From the NCBI RefSeq assembly GCF_020745735.1, contig NC_083418.1, positions 372,001-436,000 on the forward strand: a stretch of 64,000 nt of DNA, in the 5' to 3' direction. The notes under the pieces were generated by a model. It searched no databases. It saw only the letters and a list, made by a program, of their open reading frames with translations, and had not been told where the DNA came from. The stretch is from Hemiscyllium ocellatum. Its lineage: Eukaryota. This document shows positions 2,191 to 49,862 of this stretch, one piece after another; within the stretch, counting starts at the first letter, position 1, and each line of letters starts with the position of its first letter. A program made the translations under genes and the position numbers.

Positions 2191-2319
2191 AAATAGGCGA
2201 GTGGGAATGTGAGGCTCTCGTGGGTGGTGCACCCCGACGTTCAGGCTGGAAATGACCACCAGTGATCTGATCAATGAGGACAAGATCCTTTTCCGACGGT
2301 AGAGAGGTGCGTGAAATGC

Positions 2320-2660
2320 TGAGACTGGAATCTGCAACCTCACCCGGTTCACCTTTAATTGTTGCAGAGCAGGAAGAATTGTGACATGAGGCTGGGGTTT
2401 TGAACCCCATGTGGCCCAATGTTTTGACATGGAGCAGCAGGAATTATTGGAATATCAGGCTGGTAGCTCCAACCTCACTTGCTGCAGTTTTTATTGATAT
2501 TGAGAAGGAAGCACTGGGACGTCAGGCTGTAAGCTCCAACCTCACCAAGCGCAGCTCTTCTTGGCATGGAGCAGGGAACATTTGAACATCAAGCTTGGAG
2601 ATTAAAACACACCTGAAGCAGCTTCGATTGACATGAAGTAGGAAGCATTGGGGCATCTGG
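2320..2660 (+). repeat. ~67-bp minisatellite (about 5 degenerate units) inside the amplicon
   Basis: Recurrent AGGCTG..AGCTCCAACCTCACC..GCAGC..TTGACATGGAGCAGGGA.CATTG..CATC at about 2455, 2523 and 2590. Confidence 0.75.
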
Positions 2661-2794
2661 CTGAGGGAAAGGATGCTCAGCTATTATAATCTGAAGTGAA
2701 ATAGTTCTTAGCAGGACACATATTTGAGGACTGAGGGAATATGCTTTCAAAGAGAAATGTCTCAGTTATAAAGAGACATCCTGCAAAGGTTCTC

Positions 2795-3097
2795 GTCGTG
2801 GAGGAGTTCAGTAGTTATCGCTGCACTCTCAAAGCACCATTGATCGGATTCGATTCCAGCAGTGGGCGACTGTCTCTGTGGAGTTTGAACATGCTCCTTG
2901 AATATTTGCGAGTTTCCTCCGAGTTCTCTGGTTTCCTCTCACTATATGAAATGTTCAGTTGTATTAACCATGTTAAATTGCCAATACTGTTAGGTGCATT
3001 ACTCAGAGGGGAGTAATCTTGTGGGTTCTTCTTTGAACCATTAGTGTGCATTTGTTTGTCCAACTGGCCTGTTTCCAGTTTGGAGGGAAACTAATCT
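2795..3097 (+). mobile_element. HE1-type tRNA-derived SINE (old)
   Basis: GGGCGACTGTCTCTGTGGAGTTTG..GTTTCCTCC..GGTTTCCTC core and GGCCTGTTTCC tail as in the young copy at 62533. Confidence 0.8.
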
Positions 3098-3190
3098 GTG
3101 CAGAGAGAAATGGAGGCATTTTTTACGCTCTGTGACCTTTCTCATATTGCTGACTCTGCACTGAGTTAAATTTACAGAAGCGAGTTTTAG

Positions 3191-4366
3191 AACATAGCAC
3201 ATTGAAAAATACAGCGCAGTACAGGCCCTTCGGCCCTCAATGTTGCGCCGACCGAATCCTACCTAACCTATACTAGCCCAATAACTTCCAAATGCCTATC
3301 CAATGCCCGCTTAAATGACCATAAAGAGGGAGAGTTCACCACTGCTACTGGCAGGGCATTCCATGAACTCACAACCCACTGTGTAAAGAATCTACCCCTA
3401 ACATCTGTCCTATACCTTCCACCCCTTAATTTAAAGCTCTGTCCCCTTGTAACAGCTGACTCCATTAGCGGTAAAAGCTTCTCAGTGTCTACCCTATCTA
3501 AACCCCTAATCATCTATCAAATCTCCCCTAAACCCTCTTTTCTCCAATGAGAACAGCCCCAAGTGCCTCAGTCTTTCCTCATACGATTTTCCTACCATAC
3601 CAGGCAACATCCTGGTAAACCTCCTCTGCACTCGTTCCAATGCCTCCACATCCTTCCTATAGTATGGCGACCAAAACTGCACACAATACTCCAGATGAGG
3701 CCGCACCAGAGTCTTATACAACTGCAACATGATCTCAGGACTCCGGAACTCAATTCCTCTGCCAATAAAGCCCAGTACACCATATGCCTTCCTCACAGCA
3801 CTATTTACCTGGGTGGCAACTTTCAGAGATCTGTGCACATGGACACCAAGATCCCTCTGCTCATCCACACTACCAAGTAGCCTACCATTAGCCCGGTAAT
3901 CCATCTTCTTGTTACTCCTACCAAAGTGAATGACTTCACACTTAGCTACATTGAATTCCATTTGCCACCTTTCTGCCCAGCTCTGCAACTTGTCTATATC
4001 CCGCTGTAACCTGCCACATCCTTCCTCACTATCCACAAATCCACCGACTTTTGTGTCATCCGCAAACTTACTCACCCAGCTTTCAAGCCCCTCCTCTAGA
4101 TCATTTATAAAGATAACAAAAAGCAATGGTCCCAAAACAGATCCTTGAGGTACACCGCTAGTAACTACACTCCAAGATGAACCTATACCATCAACTACTA
4201 CCCTCTGTCTCCTTCCAGCCAGCCAATTTCTAATCTAAACCTCTAATGCACCCTCAATGCCATACCTCCGTAGTTTTAGCATTAGCCTACCATGGGGTAC
4301 CTTATCGAACGCCTTACTAAAATCCATATACACAACATCTACTGCTTTACCCTCGTCCACCTCCTT
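3191..4366 (-). mobile_element. CR1 (HER1-like) LINE, 5'-truncated, RT C-terminal part and 3' UTR
   Basis: ORFs 3506-4135 and 3268-3513 carry GPLLFVIFINDL, KFADDTK, LVRPHLEYCVQFWSP; 12-bp TSD AGCGAGTTTTAG (3179-3190) / AGCAAGTTTTAG (4367-4378). Confidence 0.97.
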
Positions 4367-4758
4367 AGCAAGTTTTAGCTTGTTTCATGTTATTGAATTT
4401 CCTGCGATCTCGCCCAGATCTTAAAAGTAATCTCAAGCTACGAAAATTAACGGGAACGTCCATTGCGATTACACTCACGTTTACCTCGATTTATGGTCGA
4501 AAAGCAGGGAACAAGAGTTGAAATTTATCAGATTAACATTGATCATATTGAATACTAGCACAGATATCGGGTGAATGTCAGCTTCATGGGGGCAGACGTG
4601 TTTTCTTTGCATCTGTTGCTTCAAAAAGAGGGGGTCATTGACGTGAAGCAGTGATGGTGAATATCTTTGCTGGTTATTGAACTTGTGAACAGGAATGTTG
4701 TTGTTCATATTCGTGTTAACAGCTCTGCTTTGCAGCCTGGATACATGCCGTAATGTCA

Positions 4759-4831
4759 TGGCCAGTGGCGCAATGGGTAATGCAACTGTCTACGGGTCAG
4801 GAGTTTGTAGGTTGGAATACTGTTTGGCGCC
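4759..4831 (+). pseudogene. tRNA-Arg(ACG) pseudogene
   Basis: TGGCCAGTGGCGCAATGGGTAATGCAACTGTCTACGGGTCAGGAG aligns ungapped to tRNA-Arg-ACG; anticodon ACG kept, T-arm (GGTTGGAATAC) and stems mutated. Confidence 0.8.
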
Positions 4832-5209
4832 ACAGCAAGGCCTGTTGGCTATACCAAACTGATGACAAGTTGCTGTGAGGCTAAGATGTGGATTTGATTC
4901 CTGACATTCAAGTGCAAGGATCGCTTCCATAAATCCCCTGAGTATACCATGGTCACCACAGAAGTGGAATCTGAAATAGTTTTTTTCTTTCTACTTTGTA
5001 TTTGCCAAACACAGCTGCCCAATTGCTGCAACTCCAGGGAATGGCAAGGAAACCAAACAAATACCCAATCTCAAGTTTCAAATTCCTCAGAAACTCCTTC
5101 AGAAATGGAACTGGAGGAGAACACAGGCTGAAATGAAAGAAAGAGAATGGACTATCCAGACATCTTGCCCTTCTGTCAGAATCCGACTCATTGACACGAA
5201 TGTTCTCGG

Positions 5210-5520
5210 GGTGATTAATTGAACCGATGCTTCCAAAGGAATCCTGTCACAGATGCCATCATCACTTTCTGAGGTGGTCAGTTTCATTGGCAAAGAAAGC
5301 ACATTTGTCCACATGAAGCTTCCTTTCACCCTCTGTCTGCCCAGATATTTAATTTGATTACGGCCGATCAGATAAATTTCACCTCCTCTCTCCTGTTGTT
5401 CCTCCATTCTTTGAGGGAAACTCAAGCCGAATCCCAGCATCATATATCTCCTTTGATGTTCGCATTTTTAGTTTACTTTAATGGCCTGAACAAGCTTGCA
5501 GGAAATTGAATGGTCCGAAA
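5210..5520 (+). mobile_element. old CR1 3' fragment
   Basis: Degenerate CR1 3' tail ending AATGGCCTGAACAAGCTTGCAGG..GAATGG. Confidence 0.4.
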
Positions 5521-5539
5521 AAACGATTTTAAAAAACCC

Positions 5540-6355
5540 TTCCCGAAAGGCAACCGACTGTTGAGTCAGACATACGAGAAATGTCAGAGAGCGATATAAT
5601 TAAATTATTTTTCTCACTGTACACGAGCTCAATCTTTCCAACATGCTTATTTGCAATTGAGAATATTCCCTGGAGCAGATCCTCTCTCAATCAACAATCA
5701 TGTGTGCTGCCAGGAACTATTTCAATTCTGATTAAAATAATTCAGAATCTTACCCCCCCAAGGCAGTGCTCCCTGCGCCATGACAATTCAAGCATCTCCA
5801 GGTGATATTAGACGTCCCAGCCCGATGCCCCAATGCTCCCTGCTCCATGTGAACAGAGATGCTCCAGCTGAGATTGGAGCTTCCAGCCTCAGCGTTTCAC
5901 GCGCCTCTATGCTTTCATAGAAGTACTGCATTCTCATGGATTTCGTCATCGGACAACAGAGGAGATGCAAGCACTCACTCCATTCCCCATTGCCGATTAG
6001 ATCATCGCCTCTGTGCCACTCAGTTTGTCTGATTCCAGACCTGGGAACGGGTGACATGAGAGTATGAAACAATATTTACTTCCACGTCTCGTGGAACTGG
6101 TAAAATAACGATGTGAAACTTCGGTGTTACTGAAACCTATATTTCGACAATACCGTGAATTATCACCTGTATATTTCATCTTTTGTAGGAACCTAAAGGA
6201 TTCAATCTTCAACATTCTGAATGATTGAATATACATAGTCCCTGGGGATATCGAAGAAAAAGTTTCAACTCAATCTCAGGATCCACACCTCAGTCTAGTA
6301 TGTGACAAGTTTTCCTGTTGTTCATGCAGTGCTGTTCCTCACCTACCTCTGCCAT
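5540..6355 (-). repeat. inverted partial copy (B) of the tRNA-Arg amplicon unit
   Basis: Reverse complement contains GGAAGCTCCAATCTCAGCTGGAGCATCTCTGTTCACATGGAGCAGGGAGCATTGGGGCATC and CCCAGGTCTGGAATCAGACAAACTGAGTGGCACAG, matching 44660-45000. Confidence 0.75.
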
Positions 6356-6387
6356 TGCATTTTTTGATTTTATATCGTGTTTTTTTT

Positions 6388-6459
6388 CGCATGATCATAT
6401 AGTGGTTCGTACTCTGCGTTGTGACCGCAGCAATCTCCGCTCATTTCTGAGTAATGGCA
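6388..6459 (+). pseudogene. tRNA-His(GTG) pseudogene
   Basis: GATCATATAGTGGTTCGTACTCTGCGTTGTGACCGCAGCAATCTC..GAGTAATGGCA aligns ungapped to tRNA-His-GTG; B-box destroyed. Confidence 0.85.
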
Positions 6460-6949
6460 TGGCACACGTGTTCCATGTTTTGCGACGTAACCTGTGTGAA
6501 ACAAACTCTGAAATGAATCAATCCCATTTTAACGGGAATAAAATCTCCAAGGTGATGATTTTATTCCTTCAGTATGCTCTCTGACGTCATTGCGATTCAT
6601 ATATCAGGATTCCAATTCACCCAATATCGGAAACTCCTCTCTCTTTCACAATCTCTGTCCCCCTTTCCTTCAGTCCTGCCATGTCACTGATTCATTCCAC
6701 TGTCTAACACTCACTTTCACGTTGACACCATCAAGTCGCTGTTTCTAGGTGAACGTGCCCCAATATCACCGTCAGGACCTTCAGACCACTTCATGCACTC
6801 AGATAAGTAGGTTGCATGATCAATCCTCATGTATAGTTTTTTTATTTGAATGGACCTGAGAGTATTGTAGCATGAGGTTCACGAAAAAAAGTTCTGAACA
6901 GAATCGAGGTGAAGAGACTTTATTGGAAAAGACCAATATCGGTGGTTTC

Positions 6950-7470
6950 TGCACATTTGTCTCATATCGTGATTTGGTTGTCGCTCGGGCATTGATTACA
7001 ATTCTGCAATTCACATTAAACAAGCGATATGACAGCTATCAAAATGGTGCAGAAGTGATTTTTCAAGATATTGTCTGGCTTGAAGACGTGCAGCTATTGA
7101 AGTGTTTCAACAGACTGGCGTTATTTTCCTGAGAGCAGGGGAGGTTCAGAGGAGAAATCATTGATATGTAGAAAATAATGAGGGGTATGGATTGGGCACA
7201 TTGAGCGAAACATTTCCCTATGATGGAGGTGTCAATCATCAGTGAACTGCAGATTTAAGGTAAGATGGAAGAATGTTTGAGTAGATGTATATAAAACTTG
7301 ATCAGACAGCAAGTGTTTGGAATCTGGAACTCGCTGTCTCCAAGTGTCCGAGCTGCAGAAACCCTAATAACCTTCTGAGGTCCTCACTTGTGAATTTATA
7401 ATGCCAATGACACACAAGGCCAAAACATGGAAAATGGGATGAGGAGAGTCAACCAATTATTTTTAACAGG
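6950..7470 (+). mobile_element. old CR1 3' fragment
   Basis: Degenerate GTGCAGAAG..TTT, AGGTTCAGAGGAGA..ATTGATATGTA..AAAATAATGAGGGG and GGAATCTGGAACTCGCTG CR1 motifs. Confidence 0.7.
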
Positions 7471-8640: not shown

Positions 8641-8838
8641 CACTTCCTTCCGCAGCAGTGGTTAGTTTTTTGTTTGAGAGAACTGTTGATGTCACCAGTT
8701 TAAAATTCGATTGTTGATTGAGACACACAACCAGGTCCCACGCCGAATAGAGCATTTCTGTTGTGTTTCGGGTGCAATGCATAGCACGGCCTCTGGCAGT
8801 GTACTTATATGGAGTTTCCTGGAGTTTCGGTATGTGCT

Positions 8839-8910
8839 TCTGTGATCATACAGTTGACAGGACTCTGAGATGTGGCTACAGTCATTTGCGTTTGGAACCC
8901 AGTATCGATT
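8839..8910 (+). pseudogene. tRNA-His(GTG) pseudogene, highly degenerate
   Basis: TCTGTGATCATACAGTTGACAGGACTCTGAGATGTGGCTACAG vs GCCGTGATCGTATAGTGGTTAGTACTCTGCGTTGTGGCCGCAG. Confidence 0.6.
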
Positions 8911-28099: not shown

Positions 28100-28490
28100 T
28101 CAAGTGATGAGGGTTTCTGACCGAACTGCGAGTTCAAGATTCCAAACATGCGATGGCTGAAAAGGTGGTTTTTTTCCCCCAAACTCATACTCAAATCTTT
28201 CTGCCTCTTAAATCGTTGCATCCCTGGGAATTGACCACTTCATCAAGGGGGAAATGTTACTTTAACTTTACCCTTTCCTTATCCCTCGTTACTTTATACA
28301 TTTCAATCTTTTCTCCTTTCAATTCCTTCTGCTCTCAGAAAAAAACCCCGAACTCTCTTTATATCTGAAACCTCACAGCCCAGACAATATCCTAATAAAT
28401 CTCTTCTAATCCATTTCCAGTGCTATCTCATCTCCTTTCTAAAGTGAATTGCAGACTGCCCATAATAGTCCAGCTGGAGCCGAACGAACA
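28100..28490 (-). mobile_element. old CR1 3' fragment
   Basis: Reverse CR1 3' remnants (CAATATCCTAATAAATCTCTTCT..CCAGTGC..TCTCCTTTCT). Confidence 0.55.
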
Positions 28491-28569
28491 AATCAAATGA
28501 ATGGTCAGAAAATCGCATATACTTTTCCAGCAAACTCTCTTTTCCTCAATAATATCTCGTGTCCTTTTC

Positions 28570-28770
28570 ATAGAACCATGGAACTTGTACAGTGTGGAAA
28601 CAGGCCGTTCAGTTCAACAGGTCCACAATGACCCTCCGAAGAGTAACTCAACTAGACCTGTCCTTTTATTGGATATTTACCACTCACTCATGCGCCCAAC
28701 TTACACATGCCTGAACACGATGCGAAATTTAGCATGTCCAATTCACCGAAATCTTCTCATCTCCAGATAC
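28570..28770 (-). mobile_element. HE1 SINE 3' fragment
   Basis: TACAGTGTGGAAACAGGCC..GTCCACA..AATTTAGCATGTCCAATTCACC. Confidence 0.75.
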
Positions 28771-29576
28771 TCGTGCTCCAAGAATCTGTGGTTCATGCCA
28801 GTTAAAGTTGCGACATGAGGTTTGATCGAGCAATCACATCATCAAATTGGTTCAATTGGTTTTAAGTTGCCAAAGCTGATATTAGAGCATGTGCATCCAG
28901 CAATAATGACTGCAGCTCCACAAATTGAATGGAGCCAATGTGAAATTAATTGTAAGATTGCGCAGTGCCTGATGGAACTTGGAGGATATTGAGAGGAGGG
29001 TCAGTTAGTGTGGGAGAAAGACAAAAATATCCAACAGTGGGTGGTTTCGATTCCTTATATATAACAGGCTGAGATGTGCGCGAGCAGGTTCTGAAGAAAG
29101 AAAATCATCACGTTGGAGAAAATTTTCATGTGCAAACAATTGATCCCATGCTGTGATGATTTAGTACATGTCACATAGAGTAAAAGGGAGAATATATTAC
29201 GTCACATGACTCGAATTCTAAACGTACTGCTGCAGCCATAAAGCAAGGTATTGACCACGGAATACTAATGCAGCATTTCAAAAACCAATGCACTTAAAAA
29301 ATACTTACAGTGGCAGAAGATATGTCAGAAACAGCGACACAAACACAAGAAGACCACTTAGCGAAGTCTCGACTGAGATGTTGGAACTCAGAATGGGCTG
29401 AAACTTCAACTTCAACTTTTCCAGAGGCTGTGAAGTTTCTATCATTGGATATGATGACGACTGAGATGAACTTTTTTTCACAGAATATCAAATGCTGTGA
29501 AGATAGCCTGAGATAATGTTTAAATGCATGTTTTAATAGTCATGCAGTTTGCCATGATTTACTTCAGCAGTTTGTG

Positions 29577-29801
29577 GTCGGCACGGTGGCGCAGTGGTTA
29601 GCACTGCTGTCTCATAGCGCCTGAGACCCGGGTTCCTCCCACAGTCCAAAGCTGTGCGGGTCAGGTGAATTGGCCATGCTAATTGCCCATAGTGTTAGGT
29701 AAGGGGTAAATATAGGGGTATGGGTGGGTTGCGCTTCGGCGGGTCAGTGTGGACTTGTTGGGCCGAAGGGCCTGTTTCCACACTGTAAGTAATCTAATCT
29801 T
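29577..29801 (+). mobile_element. HE1 SINE with internal deletion
   Basis: Head to ACCCGGGTT joined directly to CCTCCCACAGTCC (microhomology GGTT); tail intact. Confidence 0.9.
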
Positions 29802-32800
29802 ACCTCACATATGGAAGTAACCACTGCTGACAACGATCACATATATTTAATAACCATTCAGAGAAACTGAGTGGTACGGCTGCGAAACTCCCAAATTAAT
29901 GAGAATACTCAACATTTTTTATTCAGCTCAACTCTACATCGAGATATCGAGGAAAAGCACGATAGTAGACTTAGATTTTTTCAGATTAGCGGTAATCCCA
30001 TTAAATGGCTGCGCAGACATGGGTGAATGAAAGCTTTATGAGAACAAGTGCACTTTCTTTGCGAAATTATCTGCTTCACAATGTGAGGACTATTGCAGTG
30101 AAGTGGTGAAGTTGATTATATTTACTAGTTGTTGACCCTGAGACGGTTACCATTGTATCTCCTGTCCCTGATATCATCACAGACCTGCAGCAAGCGCACT
30201 TGAAACAGTGGCTTCATGATTTGCTTGTTTGCAAATCTTGGAGTTGGTCATTCGACACGTCAATGTCTCAACAATACTGCTGCATTTTATTACACTTGCA
30301 AACTCATTGTCCCAAAGTCGAGATGTGTTTTGAGTTCCTTATCTGCAGGAAGATGTATCTTTCCTCAACAACAATGCACCACTTTCTTATGTACAAGAAT
30401 GTTTGAAATGCTGGGATGTCTGAATTATTGATATGAAGCTATGCCCAACTTCAATCTATGTTCCACTTATAAGTATTGTCGGCTACCAAGGCTTACTGTT
30501 GGCAATGTTTCAATCGATTATAACGCAATTCGCTTTTAAACAGGGGCTCGGTGTGGTAATAGAGAGTACTAAAATGATTAACATAATTCCACCGAATCGT
30601 TCAAAAGAATTGACGTCTTCATTAGAAGCATCTTGCAAAGTGAATTGTTTATCTTCTTGAACTTGATTTTCCTCCATTTCTCTCTAAACTGTGCAGTTTC
30701 TGAGGACGTTGTAGCCAGAACATTTGAAATAAATTCATTATGTTTGGAATTAATTGTGGAAATTCTTAATATACCGATTAATGTCTACGATCGAGGAATG
30801 TAACCGAGAACATCAGAGTCAACCTAAAGGCGCTGTCAAAAGAGGGAAAGATAGAATAGTCTCACACGCTGCTCTTGTGCCCATTATCAATTTCAAACCC
30901 ACCCAATCTCTGCAATCTCTGGGAGCAAAAAGGAAACAATTAAACAGAGCCCCGTTTAACACCTGTGAATCTTTAGAAACTCTGTGGGAGGGGAATGAAA
31001 GGTGACCTGACCGACTGTGCAGAGACTGTCAATGTACATTCCCCTTCTGGAAGGAGCAGGGGCACTCGGATGTTCTCGAGGCATGAACTGATCTGAGACA
31101 GTGAAAGGATCCCCATCAGTGCTGCTCCACTCTCGCTGTTGTCACTGTCAGGAACAATAAAACCTTATTCCCTGACCAGACACCCAACTCTGGCCACGGT
31201 GAAGAAAACAACGACTCTTAGCCATTATACCACCAGTGCTGCCTCATGAGTTGTTGGACAGCCTCTTAATGTCAAAGCATATCGTTTGTTATTTATCAGA
31301 ACATACGTTTGAGCAACTTATCGACTATTCACAGAACGGAAAGAGGCCCATCATCCAAGTTTTCAGCACTTGGCCTGTCCCCTTGTTTTCTCAGATTTTT
31401 CAAGCACTCGTCAAATGCTATTATTCAGTCACGTTTTGCAATGAATGGACAATCTGTGTTAGGTTAGGATGGACAACCTGTGTTCATACCCTCTGGGTGA
31501 GCTGAACCCCATTTCCAACACAGAAGGAAACACACAGACACGTTCTGGTGGAGTGACTGAGGTCTCAGGAGAGATCAACCAGAAGGAAGGATTTCATCCA
31601 ATTTGCTTATTTTGTCTCATTTCAGATTTCAACACCAGAGTCTGCTTACAGCAAAGGAAGGAAACATTCAGCCATTCTTGTGTCCGTGTTCCTCCCTTAT
31701 CTAAGCATTGAGCGACAGAGGCAGTGTGCTCTGAGGGAAGGATTCTCACTTATTAGAAACAGCAACATAATAGATGATTGGATAGCCTGTGCATTGGAAA
31801 CCAGTCGTTACAAAACCAAGACAGAACTGAAGGCATCATTTGCAGAAGGATGAGAGAATATAATGCCGAATCAGACAGTGTCCAGGGTGAAAGAAACAGA
31901 GACTGTCCCTGGAAGTCTCGTCATTTGGTTTCCGTGCTCTCACAGCCATGGCCTGCAAATAATGAGCATTCATGGTTACCATTACGAAATGCTGCCTTCG
32001 CCTTAAAGTAAAATTATGACCTGAACATACGCACATGAATTGTGAAATTGATAAAAAATTATCCGAGTTTTTAATTCCATATTTGGGCAGAAAGAGTAAC
32101 ATGCAAACTCTTAGATTATCATTAAAATCCAATATTAAAGGCAGTTTGTGTTTTCACAAAACTACTAAATCAGAGCAAGAGCTGGGAGTACATGACTGAA
32201 GGAGGCGACTGCGCCTGCTTTCGACCCACAACTTTTCATCCCTTTCGTCCCAAGAGCAAGTGCAGAAGCAAAATACTGGTAATCTGACATATATATGAAT
32301 ACAAAACGGAAAACGTTGGAAATATTCAACTTGTCTGGCATCTTCTGAATGTGTGGTCGAGGTCAACGCCATGACAACCTGATTGTCTTTACTTTGTATT
32401 CATGATAACTAATGCCCAAGTCGCAACTCATTCAGACACGTTTCATCACCTTTAAACGGGATGCACGCTTTTAGTTTGCCATGAGAAACGTTTTGTCAAT
32501 TAATTCGGTACTGAAAGGACAACCGTTTAAAGCTGTATGAAACATGTTACAAATTTTCAAACCAGACAAAATGAGGTACCATGTGAAGAAATATGTGTTT
32601 CAGTCAGGAAAGCTAAAATAGAATTTTTCAGAGAAGATTGTGTTGAACTGTCGCCGATGTTTTGACAGAGATAAGTAGAAATCTCGATGATGATAATCCA
32701 AAATGATCAGATAAATGTAGATTGCGGGGGGAAATGGCAAAAGTTCTGTGAGCCCACTGTCTGTGAAAAATGGAAATGAAGGAATATAAGGGAAAGTAGA

Positions 32801-32829
32801 AATATTGATCATAAATTGTCTGCGTGATA

Positions 32830-38040: not shown

Positions 38041-38779
38041 TAAGTTTGTGATTCAACTTTAAGCAAACAGTTTCGATTACGTCTCAGTAAACTAAAAGAC
38101 AATTGAGTTCGAATTTATTATTCTGCCAACATCGATCCAATGAGATATTTCGATTTTGTAGATATAAGAAAAGCAGGCATTTTGAACATCCGACAAAGTA
38201 ACTGCCATCAAGAGATTCCCAAAGGAAAAATTGAGTTAAAGAGACGAGCCTAAAAAACAAAAAAGACAGTTTGTGAAATGAGTGGAATGACTCTGGTAAT
38301 ATGTGCAGTTGAAACAAAATAAATGTTAGCATGAAAGCTGCTGGATTGTGCTGCTCGATCTGATCATTTCAACGACCACATGTTCCCCACATGTAGATAG
38401 TTGATAACTCTCCCGAATCTCAGTTCATTTGAAGCTGAACCTCTCACTTTTTCCCGCTTTGACATCATTAGAAGAGAGTTTAAATGGAATGCAGGTAAGT
38501 GTAACCATATTTGGTCGAATGAGAATTGCAATTCTGACGAATGATGTTTTCAAATGAATATCAAACGAGACAATGAAAATTCAGTGAAGGAACAAAACAA
38601 CATGACTTAATTTACTGGAAGAGTGCCACAGACGCCCGATCACCGTAGGGGTGTAGAGGAACTAATACGCAGTTAATTTCGCAATAATGATAAAATAACA
38701 GGGCCTGAATAGAAGGGAATTTTCACAACTCCAATTTAATGTGTCACTGTGATGAAAAATGATTTTTCCAGTGATTTCA

Positions 38780-39120
38780 AGTGCACTGTTTTGGTCAGTC
38801 ATGGCAAGACCAACAAGAGGGGCACAATTGTGGAGCTAGATTTAAGAAATTAAGCTGGGCAGTAGGAGGAATGGCAGTGAGATAGCATCGTTGTGGCAGA
38901 GATCATAACTCAGTCAGCTTTACCATCATACTGAAAACAACCTGTGGTGTATGTTGATTTTACCAAGGCTTTTGATGTAACCCCACATGGCAAACTGGTT
39001 AACAGATAGAAGTTTATGGCATTAATGGAAACGTGACAAATGAGGTAACATACTAGCTTAGTGGCAGGAAATAAAGATGAATTGGTGACCGGTAATCCCT
39101 GGTCCATGTGAGTAAAGGCG
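38780..39120 (+). mobile_element. old CR1 RT fragment
   Basis: GTGGTGTATGTTGATTTTACCAAGGCTTTTGATGTAACCCCACATGG encodes VVYVDFTKAFDVTPHG. Confidence 0.7.
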
Positions 39121-41512
39121 ATTGAAATGGATCGACGAGTTTTAAGGTCCCAATTGTGGGAGGGGACACGTTTCCCCAGAAACACTGACAGCATTAGCAC
39201 AGTAACAACAGTGTCGATATTAGAGTTGAATTATGGAATGCCTCAGTAAAATGGGAGGAGCGAGGTAAAGGGGGGTTATTCACCGTAGGTGGGAGAGAAA
39301 TCTCCGAGAATGTGTGGGTTTGAATTCCGACATATGGAATGCAGAAGTGTGATATTCCTCAGAAGTAACCAATTCTGCGGAATACCATACAGTCCCAGTG
39401 AACAGGCCCAAAATCAGAGAAACTGAATGGCACAGCAGCGAATATCAAACTGGAAACGTGGATGGGGATGAGCCTGCTGTGATGGTATAAAGGTGCATGT
39501 AATCCTGGGACTGGGAGCTCCAACCTCACCTGGAGTACCTCCTACTGACGTAGAGCAGGGGCACTGCGCCATCAGACTGTGAGTTCCAATTCACACGGAA
39601 CAGATTCTGTTGGCATGAAGCTTTGTGCATTGCGGGATCAGGCTGGAAGTTCCAACCTCTCCTGGTGCAGCTTTTATTGATAACGAGCAGGAAGCAATGA
39701 GACATCAAACTGAGGGAAAAGTTATTTGTTATTTTATTCTGAATTAAAGTAGTTTTTAGCAGGACCCAATTTTGTAGTTTGAAGTCAATAGCTATCCCAG
39801 GGAAATCTCTCAATAGTAAGGGGAAATGCTGCGATGGTTTAGGTCGTAGAGGAGAATCTATGCAGAGAGAAACTCAGGTTATATTTTCACTTTCTGACTT
39901 TTATCATATGACTGACTGCAATTCGGTTCAATTGCAGCAAGCGATTTTCAACCCGTGTCATATAATTGAATTTCCTGAAAGCCCACCCACGTCATTAAAG
40001 CAATATAAACGTCCAGAAATGAATGGAATATATGATGTTGTGATATGCTCGAGTTTATCTTGATTTGTGGAAGAAAAGCAGGAAACTGATGAGGAAATGT
40101 GCAAGATCAGCGGTTATCCCATTCAATGGCTGAACAGACAGAGAGTGAATGGAAGCTTCATGAGGACAAATATGTTTTCTTTGTGAACCTTGCTGGCTCA
40201 CAAAGTGACGACGGTCGGATTGAAGTAGTGATGATGATTTTCTTTTCTGCTTGTTAAAGTTTTGAACATGACTGCTGCTTTTCATGTCCATGGTAGCAAA
40301 AAAAAACGTTTTGATTCCCCTCCGCGTTTGTTAAGCATGCGTTACTTTGAATATAATGACAGAAATGACAATACTGTAAGTCAAATTCGAGGTGATCTTT
40401 CTGCTGCCACAACGCAAAGCGCTAATCACTGCACGATATCGATACCACATGGAATAGCATGATGCAAAAAGCAGTAAAGACAGTGAGAGAGGATATCTTA
40501 GGAACAGAACCACATAAACGATTGGAATGTTTGGCAGACAGTGATTGAGGCAGGCGAATTCAGGGTGGGCTGAAACTTAAACTTCGGTAACTCCAAAGCC
40601 TTTGGAAATTTCATCACTGAGCTTGATGAAGGCTAAGATTGATATACTTCTCCAGAAGATGAGAGCGTCCGGTGATATTGCAGGGTATTGGTGGAATGTA
40701 TTTCAACAAAAAACTGTAGTTTACCATTGGTTACTTCACCAATTTCCTCAGACAAGGAAGTGACCACTGCTTTGGAATATCATATAGTCCCAATTCCAGG
40801 CCTGGAATCTGAGAAACTGGTGGTGCAGCAGCGAGGAACAAACAGGAAAAGGAATTGGGATGAGCCAGTGGATGTGGTTTCAGTGATGAAATTAGTGATT
40901 GCAAAATATTTCTCTGAAAGTATGGAGTTAAATGAAATGCTGTGGCTGGGAGCTCCAACCGCACCTGCAGCAACTGCCATTGACAGGAATCAGGGATCAT
41001 GGGACATCAAGCTGACAGATCCAACCTCACCTGGAGCAGCGTCTATTGACGTCTGAACAGAGAGAAACGTAGGTCATGTTTTTGCCCTCTGACCTTTCTC
41101 ATATGCCTAACTCTATTCTGGGTTAAAATGCAGGAAGAGATTTTTTTTGTTCATTTCACATTATTCAATTTCTTGCAATCTCGCACAGGCCGTTAAGTAT
41201 TCTAGATCTTCGAAAATTAGCGTGAATACGATGATATAATTAGGCACTAGATTACCGCGGGTGATGGAGCAAAAGCAGGAAAGTGAATTTGAACTTCATC
41301 AGACGAGCAGAGATCCCATTGAATGGCTGACTCGACACAGGGTGAATGGAAGCTTCATGAGGATGAGTGTGTTTTCGTTCCGAAACTTCCCGCTGTAAAA
41401 ACAGTGGATCATTGGAATGAAGCAGTAACACGGATTATCCTTCCTGGTTGTTCGACTTGTGAACATGAGTACGATTGCTCATGAATGCAGCATGCCAACC
41501 ACAAGCACGCGC

Positions 41513-41584
41513 GAGACAGTGTCACAATGGATAATGCGCTTGCTTACAGTCCAGAGATTGCAGCTTAGTTTTCTACTTGATTCA
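41513..41584 (+). pseudogene. tRNA-Arg(ACG) pseudogene, very degenerate
   Basis: GAGACAGTGTCACAATGGATAATGCG..TTACAGTCCAGAGATTGCAG at the same position in the unit as 4759 and 45613. Confidence 0.55.
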
Positions 41585-42872
41585 AGAACAAGCCTGGCAG
41601 GCTTCAAATCCCCATACAAGTTAATCTTCTGCACTGTTCCAAAGCCGAATTGAGGTTTGAATTCTTAACCTGCAGAAGCGAAAGTCATTCAGGAAATGTA
41701 CCAAGAACATGAGAGTCAGTATCCCAGTTTCCTCACAAGAGAGGAAGCTGAAAGCACATGCTGCTCAAGGGTACCTTTCAATTTTCCAAACCCACCATAG
41801 AACTATATCCACAAGAGGTATACTTGGAAAACATTGACTGAGATGTGGAAACTCAAATCCAGTTGATTTTTTTACTTCAATCATCCTCGAGACCGTGGAG
41901 ATTACAACACTGAATTTCTAGGTTGATCGACTTTTTTTTACAAAACTTCCAAGGGTCAAGTGATGTTGCACGGTTTTGTTGAAATGAATTTCTCAAGAAC
42001 AATGTAGTGCATCATCGCTTACTTCACCAATTTCCTCACTCAATCACGGCTGTGAAATATCACATAATCACACTTCCATAGGGTTAGGAGTCAGAGAAAT
42101 TGAGTGACGCATTGGAAATGAGCATAACAATGAGCGTGAAGATTTGGCTGCAATGATGAAATCTGTGAGTGTAATGTCCTTCTCTTATGATAGAGAAGTG
42201 CATGCAATGTGAGCTCCATTTTCACCTGGAGCAACTTCTATTGACATAGAAAAGGGAACATTGGAACATTAGACTGGGGAAAGGGTGTTCAGCTATTAAA
42301 ATCTTAAGTGACGTAGTTTTGTGGCAGGACACATGTTTGCAGATTGAGGGAGTATCTGTCAGAGGGAACTATATCAATAACAAAGAAAACATCTACAAAG
42401 TTTCAACTCTTGGGGGAGCAACTGTGCAGAAAGAAGCAGAAGTAATGTTTGTCCTATCTGACCATTCCTCTCTGGCAGAGGTTTCACTGGGTTACATTGG
42501 ATAACGGCATTTTTAGCTCATTTCACAGTATTCAATTTCATGCATAGTCGCACAAGTCGTTAAAGTAATCAAAACTTCCGATGTGGTGATTGGGCTCGGG
42601 TTCACTTCAATTCTGGAAGAAAAGCAGGAAAGTGGATTCGAAATTCAAAAGATCAACACTGATCCCATTGAATGGCTAAGCAGACAGAGGTGAGTGGAAG
42701 CTTCATGAGGGCATCTGTGCTTTCATTGGAAAACTCGCCACTGCGCAAATTGTGGAATAGTGGACTGAAGCAGTAAAAGTGATTATCTTTTATTAATTTT
42801 TCAACTTGTGAACATGACATCTATTGCTGATGTCAATCATAACATCACAACTCTGAAGGGCAAAGCCTGACT

Positions 42873-42939
42873 GGGTCAGTGGCAAAATAGATAACACGCC
42901 TGACAACAGCGATTGTATGTTCGAAACTTACCTGGCTCC
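42873..42939 (+). pseudogene. tRNA-Arg(ACG) pseudogene with a deletion in the anticodon arm
   Basis: GGGTCAGTGGCAAAATAGATAACACGCCTGAC..GATTGTATGTTCGAAACTTACCTGGCTC. Confidence 0.7.
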
Positions 42940-44099
42940 CGGGCGGTGCTGAGTTTACCCTGCTCTTCTGTCGTTCTGAGGCAGAACTGCGGTGTCAAAC
43001 CCTGAACTGCTGGAGTAAGATCTATTTCATTAAATGGGATGCTGAAGTAGTCGCACACGCTGCTCTTCACATCTTTCAACCCCACCTCAAACCCACCTCC
43101 GGTTCACTGCGGCAGCTGGGCCTGGCAAGTAAAGGATAGAGAACCAAGTGTCAGCCATGACAATCTTGAGAAACTGTTTGGGAAGTGGAAACAGAGAAGG
43201 ATGGAATGTGAACTGTCTGACTGAGCAGAGATTGCTGAGGCACCATCCCTTTCTTTAAGAGGCCGTGAAATTAATTCTCATGTTTCAAGGTCATTAATTG
43301 ATCTGATGTATGAAAAGCACTCCCATTGCAGGTGCTCTGCTTTTGCTGATGTCGCTTCCAGGATCAAAAGAAAACCCAAATCCTTGACTGAGAATCAAAA
43401 CCAGGTCACAGCGAAGAAAGCGAAGAAAATGGAACCGCTCCCCCAACAGAAACAGCTACACGAATCGTACTCATCTACGCTCTGTACTTTTTTCTGAGGC
43501 CCTGCTTCAATTAACTGTTGTCCGTGCCAGTAAGAGATGCTACGCAAAGATTAAACTCAGAACCGCTGCATCGAAATGGATTGAATTGCTTGAAGGTCCC
43601 GACCGTAGGATGGGGCCACTTTCAACCAAAACATTGACCACAGCAGCATAGACCGAAAAGAGACAAGGGAGTGTTGTATTGTGCAATACCTCAGTGAAAT
43701 GGGTGAATGGACGAACAGGAGATTTGGTGCTTGTCGGAAGGAGGTAAATCTGCGATAATGCATGGTTACGATATTTGAAACACAAAAATCTGAGAGAACA
43801 GGTGTTTGAAGAAGCAAATTTATCACCAGGAAGAGTATTTTCATGTAAAAAACAAAGATTGTTTTGTTTGTCGTTTTTGCTAAGCACGTATTACATGGAT
43901 CAAAATGGGAAGAATGCCGACTGCTGTCACTGCGCTTCGAGCAGAACTTGCTGTGGCCACAATTTCAAGGATGAGCCATTTCATCATCCCGGCGCTGCAT
44001 CGTAAAGCACGAACGAAAAAGCAATATGGATCGTGGGAGAGGTTATATCAGGAACAGAACCACATGCACAAAGGAACACTTGCCAAACAGTGACTTAGA

Positions 44100-44424
44100 T
44101 AGAACTTTGAACGTAGAACAGAGAACAGTACAGCCCAGAACAGGCCTTCAGCCCACGAATTTGTAACGACCTCTGATCCTCATGTATGCACCCTCAAATT
44201 TCTGTGACCATATGCATGTCCAGTAGTCTCTTAAATGTCCCCAATGGCCTTGCTTCCACAAATGCTGCTGGCAACGCATCCCATGCTCTCACAACTCTCT
44301 GTGTAAAGAACCCGCCTCTGACATTCCTCCTATACTTTCCTCCAACCAGCTTAAAACTATGTTAGTCATTTCTGCCCTGGGAAATAGTCTCTGGCTATCG
44401 ACTCCATCTATGCCTCTCATTATC
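44100..44424 (-). mobile_element. CR1 3' fragment inserted into the amplicon unit
   Basis: TAGAAC-type tail, CAGGCCTTCAGCCCAC, GTGTAAAGAACC; splits the unit motif GACT.AGAT|GTGG.AACTC seen intact near 41837. Confidence 0.85.
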
Positions 44425-45612
44425 AGATGTGGGAACTCAGGTTAAACTTTAATCTTACGAGAAACTGTGGAGATTCCAACACTGTGTTTGTAGAAGACAA
44501 ATATTGCTCGATTTCAGCAACAGTTTGAAGAGTCATGGGATACTGTGTGGTATTGTTGAAATGTATTTCTCAATAACAACGTAGTTTAACATCGGTTACT
44601 TCACTGCTTTCCTCACTCATTTTCGTTATCAATGCTGTGGAATATGATATAATTCAGTTCCCAGGAGTGGAGTCAGATAAATTGAATCGCACAGACCCGA
44701 AAACCAAGTGGAGATGAAGATGGCGATGAGTGCGAGGGTATGGCTGCAGTAATGCAATTGGTGAACAGAGTGCCGTTCTCTGATGGTGCACAGGCGCCTG
44801 AAGTATCGAGGCTAAAATCTTAAACATCACCTAAAGCAGATTCGCTTTCCGTGCATGAAAAAGCAGTGGCACATCAGCCTGAGATCTCCAATCTCACCTG
44901 AATCAGTTATATTCACATGTAGCAGGGAGCCTTGGGGAATCTAGCTGTGAGCTCCGATTTCACCTGGAAGACCTTCGTTTGACATGGGGCAGGGAACATT
45001 GCGACATCGTCTAGGGGAATGGATAGTCAGCTGTTTTAATCTTAAATTAAGCAGATTTCAGCAGGACACATATTTGTGCATGGAGAGAATATCTCAAATA
45101 CAAAAAAGTACTTTGTAAATATTCAACTCATGGAGGAGCATCTGTGCATAGAGAAGCAGAGAAAATGTTTACGTAATTTGACCTCCCTGATATGGCTGAC
45201 TCTGCATTGGATTAATTCGCATGAAGGATTCTTTTTGCTTGCTTCATAGTTTTCAATTTCTTGCATACTCACAGAGGTCGTTAATTTAATCGAGATTTCC
45301 GACAAAATTCTGGCATGCAATGTGGTGATCAGGCTCAATTTCACGTCAGTTATAGTGGAGAAGTAAGAAAGTGAATTGGAAATTCATCAGATCAGCACTG
45401 ATCCCATTGAATGGATGAGGAGCAAAGGCGGAATGGAAGGTTCATGAGGGCATATGTGATTTATTTGGGTAATTCGCTGCTTCGCAGGATGATGAGCATT
45501 GGACTGAGGCAGTGACAATGATAATCTTTCTTGGTTTTTCAACGTGGGTACATGACTGCTATTACTCATGCCCGTTTTAACAGCAAACATCTGAAAGCTG
45601 TAATTGCGCATA

Positions 45613-45685
45613 GGGCGAGTAGCGCACTAGGTAACGCGTCTGACTACGGGTTAGGAGATTGTAGGATCGGCTCATAACTGGCTCG
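45613..45685 (+). pseudogene. tRNA-Arg(ACG) pseudogene (best-preserved copy)
   Basis: GGGCGAGTAGCGCACTAGGTAACGCGTCTGACTACGGGTTAGGAGATTGTAGGATCGGCTCATAACTGGCTCG, 73 nt ungapped vs tRNA-Arg-ACG; T-loop GGATCG is non-canonical. Confidence 0.85.
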
Positions 45686-46129
45686 CGGGAAGCACGCGCT
45701 TCTTTTGCACATACAAACTTTCTGGTTGTTCTGAAGTCGAAATAAGGTTTGAGATCCTCCTCTGAAGGAAATAATATGGCTTCATAAAATATCTCCGAGA
45801 GCATGAGAGTCACTGTTTCACTGTCAGCACACGAGAGGAAGCTGAAATATTCGCATACGTTGCTCATCGTTACATTTCCAATTCACAAACTCACTTATCC
45901 AATCACAGCGGCTTGCGGGAATGGGAAAGAAACATTCCAAATCGCTCATTCATAGCTTTGATTATCTTTGGAAACTCTTGGGACAATGGAATTAGAGGAG
46001 AATGAAGGGTTAACTATCCAACTGAGCAGCGACTGTCGAGGAAATTTCTCCTTTCTTCACAGGCTTGCATATTGAGTCTAATATTGTGGGGGACATTAAT
46101 TGATCCGAGGCATTGAATGTACTTCCGTC

Positions 46130-46245
46130 AGGGTGTAGGTTTGCTAGCTGAGCTGAAGGTTGATATCCAGACGGTTCATAACCTGGCAAGGTAACATCAT
46201 CTGTGGAGACCTCCAAGAGAAGCAAAGCTGTTGTCTCCTGCTTTC
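46130..46245 (-). mobile_element. Penelope-like terminus with mutated hammerhead (46166-46205)
   Basis: Minus strand CCA-CAGATGA-T-GTTACCTTGCCAGGTTAT-GAACC-GTC-TGG; homologous to 23430-23545. Confidence 0.75.
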
Positions 46246-47666
46246 TGGAAATCAAACCTACAGCTCAGCGACCAAACATGCGTAACTTCGTAATTTGTTT
46301 TGGAAAATGTACAGTGAAATTTATTCAAAATAAGTTAGCGAAGGTGACTTCCAGGTTTTCAAACAGACAAAAAAATTATTCACGCAATTACGGAATTAGA
46401 AACAAAGAGCAAAATATAGAATACGCACGGAACTCAGCTGTCCAACTCGACTTCATTATACTTTTTCAAAAATACTCAACAGTGAAAATGAAACGGAGGT
46501 TTCCAGGTCGAAATTAGACAGGCAGCAGAAGAGAGACGCCCACATCACTGACATCGATGGGCACATTGAAAGTCTTCGTGAAATTTGATATAACTGATAC
46601 TTTGGCAATGGTTAATACAGTATGTAGGCTGCCAATTACGTTCTGAAAGTTTTGTGTACACTAAAACTTCTTGTCTGTTTTTAGAATTCGTTGTGTGGAG
46701 TAGTCCCCTGCACACATTCAGCACAAAATTTCCGTAAAAGCCACTCAATCTGTGGAACTGTAGTACTCTGCTCTTTTCGTTAACGGTGTGAAATAGTTCC
46801 CTGTAACTTTTGTTTTTGTGTCCCCTGAGGCTATCTGTCCGCGTTCAATAACATGGCCAAGGATGGTGCCTTGGGCTTTGGCAAATTCACTTTCAGCGAG
46901 GTTTAGCAGGCAGCCTGACGTCTGAATTCGATCAAACAAATCCGATAAATGATAAAATATGTTCAATCCATGTGTGACTGAAAGTCACCACGCACAATAT
47001 ACCCCATGCAGTTGGGTATTCCGGCAATCACCTTGTTAATTAGTTTCTGAAACGTGGCTGTTGCGTTTTCCGTATAAATGGCATTACTTTAAACTGCTGA
47101 AGTCCAGTTGTCGTGACAAAAGCTGAAGTTGCCTTTGATCTTTCTGACAAAGTTTACTTCCAGTAACCCTTGAGCAAGCCGACTTAGAAATGTAAGTTGC
47201 TCTTCCCATCTTTTCCACAGAGTCCCTCAACCACAGATATGTATATGCATCAGTGTTTCGAACAACAGTAACCTTTTCGTAGTCCACACATAACTATTGA
47301 GTCTTATCTGTGTTTGGCACCATGATGATGCGTGAACTTCATTCATTGAAACTCAGAGCGATTATGCCATCCTCGAGCATGTGTTCTCATACTTATGAAC
47401 TTGTACCAACTTTACAGGGTTATTCTCACCAGGATGTTACGAAATCAGAACAGCCTCTCCTATAATTGCATCATCTATAATTCGGTTAGTAATTCAGTTT
47501 ATTTCTGCATATCTCTGCATGCGAGAGTAACAACTCTTTCAGGTCATTTCGATTTTCTTCTGGAAGATAACTGAATAGCTATACCAATTGTTGACAACTG
47601 CTGCATTGTCCAATTTTATTTAAGAAACTTGTAGTGGTTCTGTTCGCCAAGCTGGAAGTTTTGGTT

Positions 47667-47706
47667 GCAAACGTTTCGTCCCCTGGCTAGGAAACATCAT
47701 CAGTGC
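47667..47706 (-). ncRNA. minimal type I hammerhead ribozyme (Penelope pLTR)
   Basis: Minus strand GCA-CTGATGA-T-GTTTCCT-AGCC-AGGGGAC-GAAAC-GTT-TGC: full core, 7-bp stem II with GU pairs, palindromic ACGT stem III, stem I GCA/TGC. Confidence 0.8.
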
Positions 47707-49822: not shown

Positions 49823-49862
49823 GCACTGATGATGTCTCCTAGCCAGGGGACGAAACGTTTGC
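49823..49862 (+). ncRNA. minimal type I hammerhead ribozyme (Penelope pLTR)
   Basis: GCA-CTGATGA-T-GTCTCCT-AGCC-AGGGGAC-GAAAC-GTT-TGC; predicted cleavage after 49859. Confidence 0.85.

What the first reader, a model, noticed from the sequence alone, without database searches (positions are those of the whole stretch)
39330..46050. Amplified ~1.4-2 kb cassette carrying a tRNA-Arg(ACG) gene, tandem here and dispersed ~35 kb away
Seen: about six homologous copies (A 2195-5130, B inverted 5540-6355, C-F 39330-46050) share one block order: leader, 67-bp minisatellite, spacer, a CR1-3'UTR-like relic (AAAAGCAGGAAA..GATC..ATTGAATGG), tRNA-Arg(ACG) and a conserved downstream flank. Four copies keep the tRNA at the same position, and each has decayed differently. 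Inference: this is a DNA-level tRNA amplicon, either a birth-and-death tDNA array or an unrecognised composite repeat. It is not a SINE, because over 1 kb of upstream flank travels with the tRNA. I do not recognise it as a named repeat.
Basis: partly seen in the sequence, partly recalled or inferred. Interest (0 to 1): 0.7.

Follow-up and report, generated by a model that had tools for sequence, protein, structure and literature searches.

The report
Decayed tandem array of tRNA-Arg genes
This stretch of epaulette-shark DNA is the worn-out remains of an old tandem array of a ~2.2-kb unit that once carried an arginine tRNA gene; every copy is now dead, so it is a genomic fossil of a known kind, not a new mobile element.

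Summary
The repeat is real. A profile built from unit E (41874-44102, 2238 nt) finds at least nine copies or fragments between 2.2 and 46.1 kb, all with the same block order. Copies are only 55-68% identical to each other and 73-79% identical to their consensus. Their tree is almost a star.

No copy holds a tRNA gene by ARAGORN or by Rfam's gathering score; the best relic (45613-45685) scores 20.7 bits against a cut-off of 29. The plurality consensus of five relics is called tRNA-Arg(ACG) by ARAGORN at default settings, so the ancestral unit carried a real gene.

The "dispersed" copies are collinear, in cyclic unit coordinates, with the tandem ones across large gaps. All minus-strand pieces lie together at 5.2-21.2 kb. 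The simplest reading is one old array later broken by insertions, about 1-kb deletions and one inversion.

I found no terminal inverted repeats, target-site duplications, Helitron ends, coding capacity or conserved RNA structure. The 6 kb I laid contigs on (units D, E, F) is low-copy in the genome, unlike the neighbouring LINE and SINE-like repeats. The "CR1-like relic" label is not supported.

Verdict: a fossil tandem tDNA array, a new member of a known kind and of modest interest.

The parts
2257..5304 (+). Unit A (model 277-1524). It has 4-5 copies of the 67-nt repeat. A young CR1-type LINE fragment is inserted at 3211-4366.
   Evidence: nhmmer profile hits E 1e-35 to 2e-220. The insert encodes an RT fragment and is 95% identical to 57669-58524 (I1).
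4759..4831 (+). tRNA-Arg(ACG) relic of unit A, 81% identical to the relic consensus.
   Evidence: Alignment A1. ARAGORN calls it only at the relaxed 80% threshold.
5200..7040 (-). Unit B, inverted (model 1473-2238, then 2-954). It is cut off before the tRNA position where it abuts unit A tail to tail.
   Evidence: nhmmer E 1e-96 to 2e-206.
8648..8904 (-). Weak remnant of a further minus-strand unit (model 2066-2216 and 117-187).
   Evidence: nhmmer --max, E 0.0049 and 0.25. Each hit is weak on its own, but they are collinear with B: a cyclic step of 1286 across 1608 nt.
16262..21211 (-). Remnant of another minus-strand unit. Model 276-411 lies at 21076-21211 and model 493-643 at 16262-16411. 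The two are split by about 4.7 kb of inserted DNA, including a LINE fragment at 17914-18604.
   Evidence: nhmmer E 1.7e-20 and 7e-4, with a cyclic step of only 82 across 4665 nt; LINE copies.
28419..31215 (+). Unit G (model 1474-2238, then 1-1572), with a SINE-like insertion near 28567-28690, another at 29574-29800, a deletion of model 247-727 and an insertion at 30358-30828. Its tRNA relic lies at about 30200-30270.
   Evidence: nhmmer E 1e-36 to 6e-150. The first 130 nt are only E 0.14.
39121..40553 (+). Unit C (model 1702-1932, 162-983, 1978-2240). It has two internal deletions, one of which removed the tRNA position.
   Evidence: nhmmer E 3e-59 to 7e-172.
40581..41843 (+). Unit D (model 1-1243, then 2193-2237). 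It has a 950-nt deletion after block d1. Its tRNA relic is at 41513-41584.
   Evidence: nhmmer E 4e-106 and 7.5e-167; relic coordinates.
41874..43430 (+). Unit E, the most complete copy and the source of the reference profile. Its tRNA relic is at 42873-42939 and has a 6-nt deletion in the anticodon arm.
43500..46134 (+). Unit F (blocks X-Y at 43500-44102, an old LINE-tail insertion at 44105-44424, then model 1-1477 at 44446-46134). It ends where a high-copy repeat begins at 46133.
   Evidence: In one search a paralogous contig joins 44095 to 44427 without the LINE piece.
45613..45685 (+). The best-preserved tRNA-Arg(ACG) relic. The anticodon loop is intact but the acceptor and T stems are broken. 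A TTTT run follows at 45703-45706.
   Evidence: Rfam RF00005 at 20.7 bits against a gathering score of 29, E 1.5. ARAGORN makes no call. Sequence read.
2436..2636 (+). The 67-nt internal tandem repeat, here in three register copies. The same repeat is at 39497-39710, 40932-41052, 42208-42278 and 44861-45008.
   Evidence: the repeat finder family D6; repeated profile hits to model 342-417.

Best explanation
This is a fossil tandem tDNA array.

1. Origin. An ancestral unit of about 2.2 kb held one functional tRNA-Arg(ACG) gene with its own terminator. It also held a variable 67-nt internal repeat and about 2 kb of non-coding flank. The unit was amplified head to tail at the DNA level, by unequal crossing-over or replication slippage, the usual route for tandem repeats. 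The array reached at least nine units.
2. Freeze. Amplification, or the homogenisation that keeps array units alike, stopped at roughly one time.
3. Decay. All units then decayed independently and neutrally, to about 75-80% of the ancestral sequence.
4. Break-up. The array was later broken by LINE and SINE insertions and a 7.9-kb spacer of unknown origin. Deletions of about 1 kb shortened units C and D. One inversion covers roughly 5.2-21.2 kb.

Nothing in it works today. No copy has an intact cloverleaf.

Shown: the copies, their collinearity, the dead tRNAs, the intact consensus tRNA, the star-like tree, and the lack of transposon hallmarks. Inferred: the amplification mechanism, the single inversion, and that the tRNA genes were once expressed.
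For: 1. Family and block order: self-BLAST and the iterated nhmmer profile.
2. Ancestral gene: the plurality consensus of five relics is called tRNA-Arg(ACG), 73 nt, by ARAGORN at default settings, while no single relic is. Relic F keeps a TTTT run 18 nt downstream.
3. One array, not dispersed copies: cyclic model steps across the large gaps are small, 82 across 4.7 kb, 130 across 7.9 kb and 25 across 221 nt. By my own estimate, a step of 130 or less out of 2238 has about a 6% chance each time. All minus-strand pieces are contiguous, at 5.2-21.2 kb, and mutually collinear.
4. Neutral decay since a single time: the tree has tip branches of 0.18-0.35 and inner branches of 0.02-0.04. Identity is about 0.6 all along the unit.
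5. No selection on the tRNA: relics and their flanks are 0.50-0.56 identical against 0.66 for the block upstream. This tracks consensus CpG density, 5.3 against 0.83 per 100 nt.
6. Low copy in the 6 kb laid (units D, E, F): only 2-8 variant contigs per position, and summed depth a few times that of exact contigs. The LINE tail and the repeat at 46.1 kb are 1,000 to 20,000 times deeper.
7. No TIR, terminal direct repeat, TSD or Helitron end, and no ORF beyond chance.
8. Tandem tDNA clusters with rapid turnover, mostly in parallel orientation, are well documented in animals (PMC2888827, PMC4041453).
Against: - Copy G is almost exactly one period long (model 1474 to 1572 of the next turn), and B starts at the same model position as G. 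That pattern is also what a discrete mobile unit would give.
- The 7.9-kb spacer between G and C has no recognisable repeat or coding content. I cannot show it is inserted DNA.
- Three of the collinear fragments are individually weak (E 0.005 to 0.25).
- Contigs 82-88% identical to units D, E and F exist outside the window. The family therefore has other loci or a continuation that I could not place.
- The contig depths come with the tool's own warning that they are not copy numbers.
- No intact tRNA-Arg(ACG) array of this unit type has been seen, so 'tDNA array' rests on the reconstructed ancestor.
Confidence: 0.7

Rival explanations
1. It is a low-copy, non-autonomous mobile or composite element of about 2.2 kb that captured a tRNA-Arg gene. 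It spread by local hopping or rolling-circle-like tandem insertion, for example as a Helitron-type element with an internal minisatellite.
For: G is almost exactly one unit long, and B and G begin at the same model position, about 1474. The tree is star-like, as after a burst. There is an internal variable tandem repeat. Related contigs exist elsewhere in the genome.
Against: There are no TIRs, terminal direct repeats, TSD-like matches or CTRR-type ends at the inferred boundaries. There is no coding capacity. Only a handful of related contigs lie at each position, against thousands for true interspersed repeats in the same stretch. All copies in the window are cyclically collinear as in one array. 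Heavy decay would, however, hide short TSDs and TIRs.
Confidence: 0.12
2. It is a plain macrosatellite or segmental tandem duplication in which the tRNA gene was only a passenger. The amplification had nothing to do with tRNA supply, and the gene may already have been dead or silenced when it was copied.
For: The tRNA part is no better conserved than the rest, and is in fact worse. It makes up only about 3% of the unit. No copy is intact.
Against: The consensus of the relics restores a complete cloverleaf with an ACG anticodon, so the gene was intact at or near the time of amplification. Relic F keeps a downstream T-run. The data cannot tell whether the gene drove the amplification. This rival differs from the best explanation only in what was selected, not in mechanism.
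Confidence: 0.15
3. The tRNA-like segments are heads of a tRNA-derived SINE that inserted into each unit, or into the ancestral unit.
For: tRNA-derived SINEs are common in this window, for example the tRNA-like heads at 24534-24593 and 29576-29635 (I20).
Against: The relic sits at the same unit position in five copies, so it predates the amplification. The bins holding it are not high-copy. The consensus is a complete canonical tRNA followed by a terminator-like T-run rather than a SINE body.
Confidence: 0.03

Closest known systems
Tandem tDNA arrays and clusters of animals: zebrafish and stickleback clustered tDNAs (PMC2888827), and the human 1q23.3 tRNA VNTR of 7.3-kb units (PMC4041453)
   Same: A kilobase-scale unit carrying tRNA gene(s) is repeated head to tail. 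Most of the unit is non-coding flank. Turnover is rapid and pseudogenes are common. Orientation is mostly parallel.
   Different: Here there is one tRNA species per unit and every copy is dead. Units are 55-68% alike rather than near-identical. The array is broken by insertions, deletions and an inversion. No CTCF-type conserved motif was tested.
Silenced plant tDNA clusters: the Arabidopsis Ser/Tyr (SYY) and Cys clusters (PMC7544208, PMC10701932)
   Same: These are tandem units of one or a few tRNA genes that are largely inactive, which shows that arrays can persist without contributing to the tRNA pool.
   Different: The plant genes are still intact and can be reactivated. The shark relics have lost their cloverleaf.
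tRNA-derived SINEs
   Same: They contain a tRNA-like segment and are repeated.
   Different: This unit is about 2.2 kb, the tRNA part is internal and followed by its own terminator-like T-run, copy number is low, there is no LINE-type tail, and copies are arranged in tandem.
Non-autonomous Helitron/Helentron derivatives with internal tandem repeats (DINE-1/HINE type; from my own knowledge)
   Same: Kilobase size, an internal variable minisatellite, and a tendency to form tandem arrays.
   Different: No 5' TC or 3' CTRR-plus-hairpin ends were found. Copy number is low. There is no evidence of insertion into unrelated sites.

Membership tests
Functional tRNA gene (tRNA-Arg ACG) | A cloverleaf that passes a tRNA detector or covariance-model threshold | tested here: not met
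   ARAGORN finds 0 genes in the window. Rfam finds 0 at gathering score. The best relic scores 20.7 bits against a cut-off of 29. Only the consensus of the relics passes.
Tandem tDNA array | Head-to-tail repeats of one unit with conserved block order | tested here: met
   Units C, D, E and F are contiguous at 39121-46134. A, B, G and three fragments are cyclically collinear with them.
Tandem tDNA array | Each unit carries a tRNA gene at a fixed position | tested here: met
   Relics lie at the same model position in A, D, E, F and G. The position is lost by deletion in C and by truncation in B. All relics are pseudogenes.
Tandem tDNA array | tRNA genes transcribed by Pol III (intact A and B boxes, expression) | not testable with these tools
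The relics are too decayed to expect activity. The ancestral consensus is intact.
SINE (tRNA-derived) | High copy number, dispersed insertions, tRNA head at the 5' end, LINE-related or A-rich tail | tested here: not met
   Only a few related contigs lie at each position, against thousands for true repeats nearby. The tRNA part is internal to a 2.2-kb unit. The block upstream of the relic has no similarity to the CR1-type LINE tail or the Penelope element in the window.
DNA transposon / MITE-like element | Terminal inverted repeats and target-site duplications | tested here: not met
   Start against reverse-complemented end gave z = -0.35 (E/F junction) and 1.06 (G). A TSD-like match of G's flanks gave z = -1.03. 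Power is low after about 25% decay per copy.
Helitron-type element | 5' TC and 3' CTRR ends with a subterminal hairpin | tested here: not met
   No CTRR-T motif lies near any of the three inferred 3' ends. The boundaries are known only to within 20-50 nt. I did not test the 5' TC end or the subterminal hairpin.
   There are no hits better than E 0.2 between three R blocks and either the CR1-type LINE (57455-58900, whose tail has ATG-ending octamer repeats) or the Penelope element. No Repbase or Dfam library was available.

The most novel reading that the evidence does not exclude
The unit is a previously undescribed low-copy element that carries a tRNA gene as cargo and spreads both in tandem and to nearby or other sites. 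The 82-88% identical contigs seen elsewhere in the genome would then belong to a younger, possibly still active, sister array or element that supplies tRNA-Arg(ACG).
Probability: 0.1. Interest if true: 0.55.

Novelty: new member of a known kind. Interest (0 to 1): 0.25.

Why it matters
It documents, in a shark, the end state of tRNA-gene birth and death: a whole tandem array that died together and has been decaying ever since. Three practical points follow.

1. Annotation. About 15 kb of this window is one low-copy family that repeat libraries built from high-copy elements would probably miss. tRNA finders rightly ignore it.
2. Dating. Star-like divergence of 0.18-0.35 substitutions per site per copy sits awkwardly with the direct epaulette-shark mutation rate of 7e-10 per site per generation (PMC10587355). 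At face value that is several hundred million generations. Either the array is very old, or repeats, CpG-rich DNA and formerly transcribed DNA mutate much faster than the callable genome.
3. Other loci. Closer relatives elsewhere in the genome point to other arrays, perhaps living ones.

None of this changes how tRNA gene families are understood.

Tried and rejected
- Coding exon in the R block. The consensus has an open frame of 41 codons, and unit D has a 44-codon ATG-to-stop ORF (41264-41398). Variability shows no three-base periodicity (p = 0.52). A 1-nt indel splits the copies 4 to 3. Pfam gives only one sub-threshold hit (DUF5997, E 0.043, 14.4 bits against a cut-off of 27), and the ESM Atlas gives nothing usable. 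Rejected as a chance frame.
- Structured RNA in the R block. RNAalifold gives -5.9 kcal/mol with a positive (unfavourable) covariation term. The permissive Rfam hits (SNORD59, mir-202, MIR8706) are far below their thresholds. Rejected.
- Long ORF in the unit consensus. The longest stop-free stretch is 96 aa against a mean of 104 in shuffles.
- Transcription-associated mutagenesis as the cause of faster decay at the relics (PMC6130373). This is possible, but the roughly six-fold higher CpG density of the ancestral tRNA explains the effect equally well. Left open.
- ORFs in the 7.9-kb spacer (31216-39120). There are no Pfam hits and no in-window repeat partner, so its origin is unknown.
- Literature searches for shark tRNA arrays returned nothing specific.


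Full report
**Source.** Earlier notes of this scan name the genome as the epaulette shark, Hemiscyllium ocellatum. Public contigs from two studies of one organism hold the stretch exactly. The window contains no N runs.

ARAGORN finds no tRNA gene anywhere in the 64 kb. Rfam finds nothing at gathering score. TRF reports no 67-nt array in the region. Even so, seed-and-extend repeat finding, sensitive self-BLAST and nhmmer all show a diverged family with one block order.

I built a profile by iterating nhmmer from unit E (41874-44102; model length 2238). It finds the following pieces:

| Unit | Window position | Strand | Notes |
|---|---|---|---|
| A | 2257-5304 | + | |
| B | 7040-5200 | - | |
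| fragment | 21211-21076 | - | |
| G | 28771-31215 | + | |
| C | 39121-40553 | + | |
| D | 40581-41843 | + | |
| E | 41874-43430 | + | |
| F | 43500-46134 | + | old LINE tail at 44105-44424 |

The true period is about 2.2 kb. The 1.2-1.4 kb spacing of C and D comes from internal deletions of about 1 kb (model 983 to 1978 in C; 1243 to 2193 in D).

The 67-nt internal repeat is real and varies from about one to five copies per unit (family D6; repeated hits to model 342-417).

**The tRNA.**

A permissive Rfam search of 38.5-47 kb gives a single tRNA hit, 45613-45685 on the plus strand, at 20.7 bits against a gathering score of 29. Aligning the corresponding segments of A, D, E, F and G places relics at:

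- A: 4759-4831
- D: 41513-41584
- E: 42873-42939
- F: 45613-45685
- G: about 30200-30270

Over the columns each one covers they are 41-85% identical to their plurality consensus. G's 41% is an underestimate, because my cut at 30215 left out its first 17 columns.

ARAGORN calls none of them at default settings. It does call the consensus as a 73-nt tRNA-Arg(ACG) with a full cloverleaf. Relic F is followed by TTTT at 45703-45706, where a Pol III terminator would be expected. The ancestral unit therefore held a genuine tRNA-Arg(ACG) gene, and every present copy is a pseudogene. C lost the position by deletion and B by truncation.

**What else is in the unit?**

- **No coding capacity.** The longest stop-free stretch in the unit consensus is 96 aa, against a mean of 104 in shuffles.
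- **The "CR1-like" R block** is the best conserved part of the unit, at 0.66-0.72 mean pairwise identity against about 0.60 overall. It has no similarity to the CR1-type LINE in this window (57455-58860, RT domain, octamer-repeat tail) or to the Penelope element.
- **No conserved RNA fold** in the R block.
- **An open frame** of 41 codons in the R-block consensus lacks three-base periodicity (p = 0.52). Its only Pfam match is a sub-threshold one (DUF5997, E 0.043), and the ESM Atlas gives nothing usable.
- **Why R is better kept.** Its conservation matches its low CpG content: 0.83 CpG per 100 nt in the consensus, against 5.3 around the tRNA.
- **No purifying selection on the tRNA.** The tRNA and its immediate flanks are the least conserved part, at 0.50-0.56.

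**Tandem plus dispersed, or one array?**

A maximum-sensitivity profile search adds weak pieces at 8904-8753 and 8727-8648 (minus strand), 16411-16262 (minus strand) and 28419-28550 (plus strand). The last lies just before a SINE-like insertion that precedes G.

I then walked along each strand in cyclic unit coordinates. The model position advances only slightly across the big gaps:

- 82 positions across 4665 nt (21076 to 16411). This gap contains a young LINE fragment at 17914-18604.
- 130 positions across 7906 nt (31215 to 39121).
- 25 positions across 221 nt (the SINE-like insertion in front of G).
- 1286 positions across 1608 nt (8648 to 7040), which is about the expected spacing.

All minus-strand pieces lie together between 5.2 and 21.2 kb. 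All plus-strand pieces lie outside that span.

The simplest account is one array of at least nine units running from 2.2 kb or earlier to 46.1 kb. It was later interrupted by insertions and carries one inverted segment, with a breakpoint at the tail-to-tail A/B junction (5200-5304).

There are caveats. Three fragments are weak individually (E 0.005-0.25). The 7.9-kb spacer has no identifiable content.

**Mobile element?**

G spans almost exactly one period, and B and G begin at the same model position (about 1474). That pattern kept this rival alive. Tests at the inferred boundaries found nothing:

- Start against reverse-complemented end: z = -0.35 (E/F junction) and 1.06 (G).
- Start against end as direct repeats: z = 0.42 and 0.51.
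- TSD-like match of G's flanks: z = -1.03.
- No CTRR-type ends.

I laid public contigs at 80% likeness or more on 41000-46999.

- Positions inside the units carry 2-8 variant contigs.
- Summed depth there is a few times that of exact contigs, rising to roughly 10-20 times over 41000-41600.
- The LINE tail and the repeat starting at 46133 are three to four orders of magnitude deeper.
- The tool warns that these depths are not copy numbers, so I use them only as a contrast.
- Several contigs are 82-88% identical to parts of D, E and F. One joins 44095 to 44427 without the LINE piece.

Closer relatives than any in-window copy therefore exist elsewhere, and at least one split off before that LINE insertion. 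This fits later segmental copying of array pieces, or a continuation of the array beyond the window. It does not fit a high-copy SINE or other transposon.

**History.**

- Pairwise identity is 0.63-0.68 among C-F and 0.55-0.64 for pairs involving A, B or G.
- Each copy is 73-79% identical to the plurality consensus.
- The maximum-likelihood tree is nearly a star. Tips are 0.18-0.35 substitutions per site and inner branches 0.02-0.04. Only the E+F pair is supported.

This is what an array looks like if it was made, or last homogenised, at about one time and then left to drift.

With the directly measured epaulette-shark rate of 7e-10 per site per generation (PMC10587355), 0.2-0.35 substitutions per site would need several hundred million generations. 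That is implausibly long. That paper itself notes that repeats were excluded and probably mutate faster. CpG decay and, possibly, past transcription-associated mutagenesis at tRNA loci (PMC6130373) would also raise the local rate. I take the array to be very old but give no date.

**Comparison with what is known.**

Tandem and clustered tDNAs with fast turnover, many pseudogenes and mostly parallel orientation are described across eukaryotes (PMC2888827). The human 1q23.3 tRNA VNTR has 7.3-kb units in which the tRNA genes make up less than 6% of the unit (PMC4041453). Arabidopsis has silenced tDNA clusters (PMC7544208). Notes of this scan mention other tRNA arrays in the same genome; I did not check them.

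The present case is a dead and fragmented member of this kind. It stands out only for how uniformly and how far it has decayed while remaining recognisable.

**Verdict.**

- The "unrecognised composite repeat" half, the "dispersed" reading and the CR1 label are not supported.
- Interest is modest.

Noticed in passing
window 46133-46400 (also 23431-23545 and 2110-2183 on the minus strand): A very high-copy interspersed repeat begins exactly where unit F ends. An inverted copy lies just upstream of unit A. Its summed contig depth is about 1,000 times that of the tDNA units. A sub-threshold MIR8706-like hairpin hit lies at 46141-46275 (21.6 bits against 95).
   Followed up: partly
window 57455-58860 (+), 3188-4380 (-), 17914-18604 (+): A young CR1-type LINE family: an RT domain, an octamer-repeat 3' tail, and copies 95-97% identical to each other. 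One copy is inserted into unit A and an older tail into unit F (44105-44424).
   Followed up: partly
window 51780-53350: A GT-rich 34-nt (68-nt higher-order) minisatellite of more than 20 diverged copies, with strong GC skew (0.42).
   Followed up: no
window 47629-49900: A large inverted-repeat structure with arms 95-99% complementary. Another note of this scan describes it as a Penelope insertion with hammerhead ribozymes. I did not examine it.
   Followed up: no
window 24276-24600, 28567-28690, 29576-29805, 60883-61143, 62582-62856: Several copies of a SINE-like repeat with a tRNA-like head. Two of them are inserted in or next to unit G.
   Followed up: no
window 26930-27439 (-): An ORF with a weak integrase zinc-binding (H2C2) hit, E 0.009. 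It is probably a decayed LTR element or retrovirus fragment lying between the inverted part of the array and unit G.
   Followed up: no
window 41000-41600: Unit D's R block and tRNA relic attract contigs with several-fold higher summed depth than the same blocks of units E and F. This hints at a more numerous D-like subfamily elsewhere in the genome.
   Followed up: no
window 31216-39120: A 7.9-kb spacer between units G and C has no in-window repeat partner, no Pfam hit in its ORFs and no unit remnant. Its origin is unknown.
   Followed up: partly
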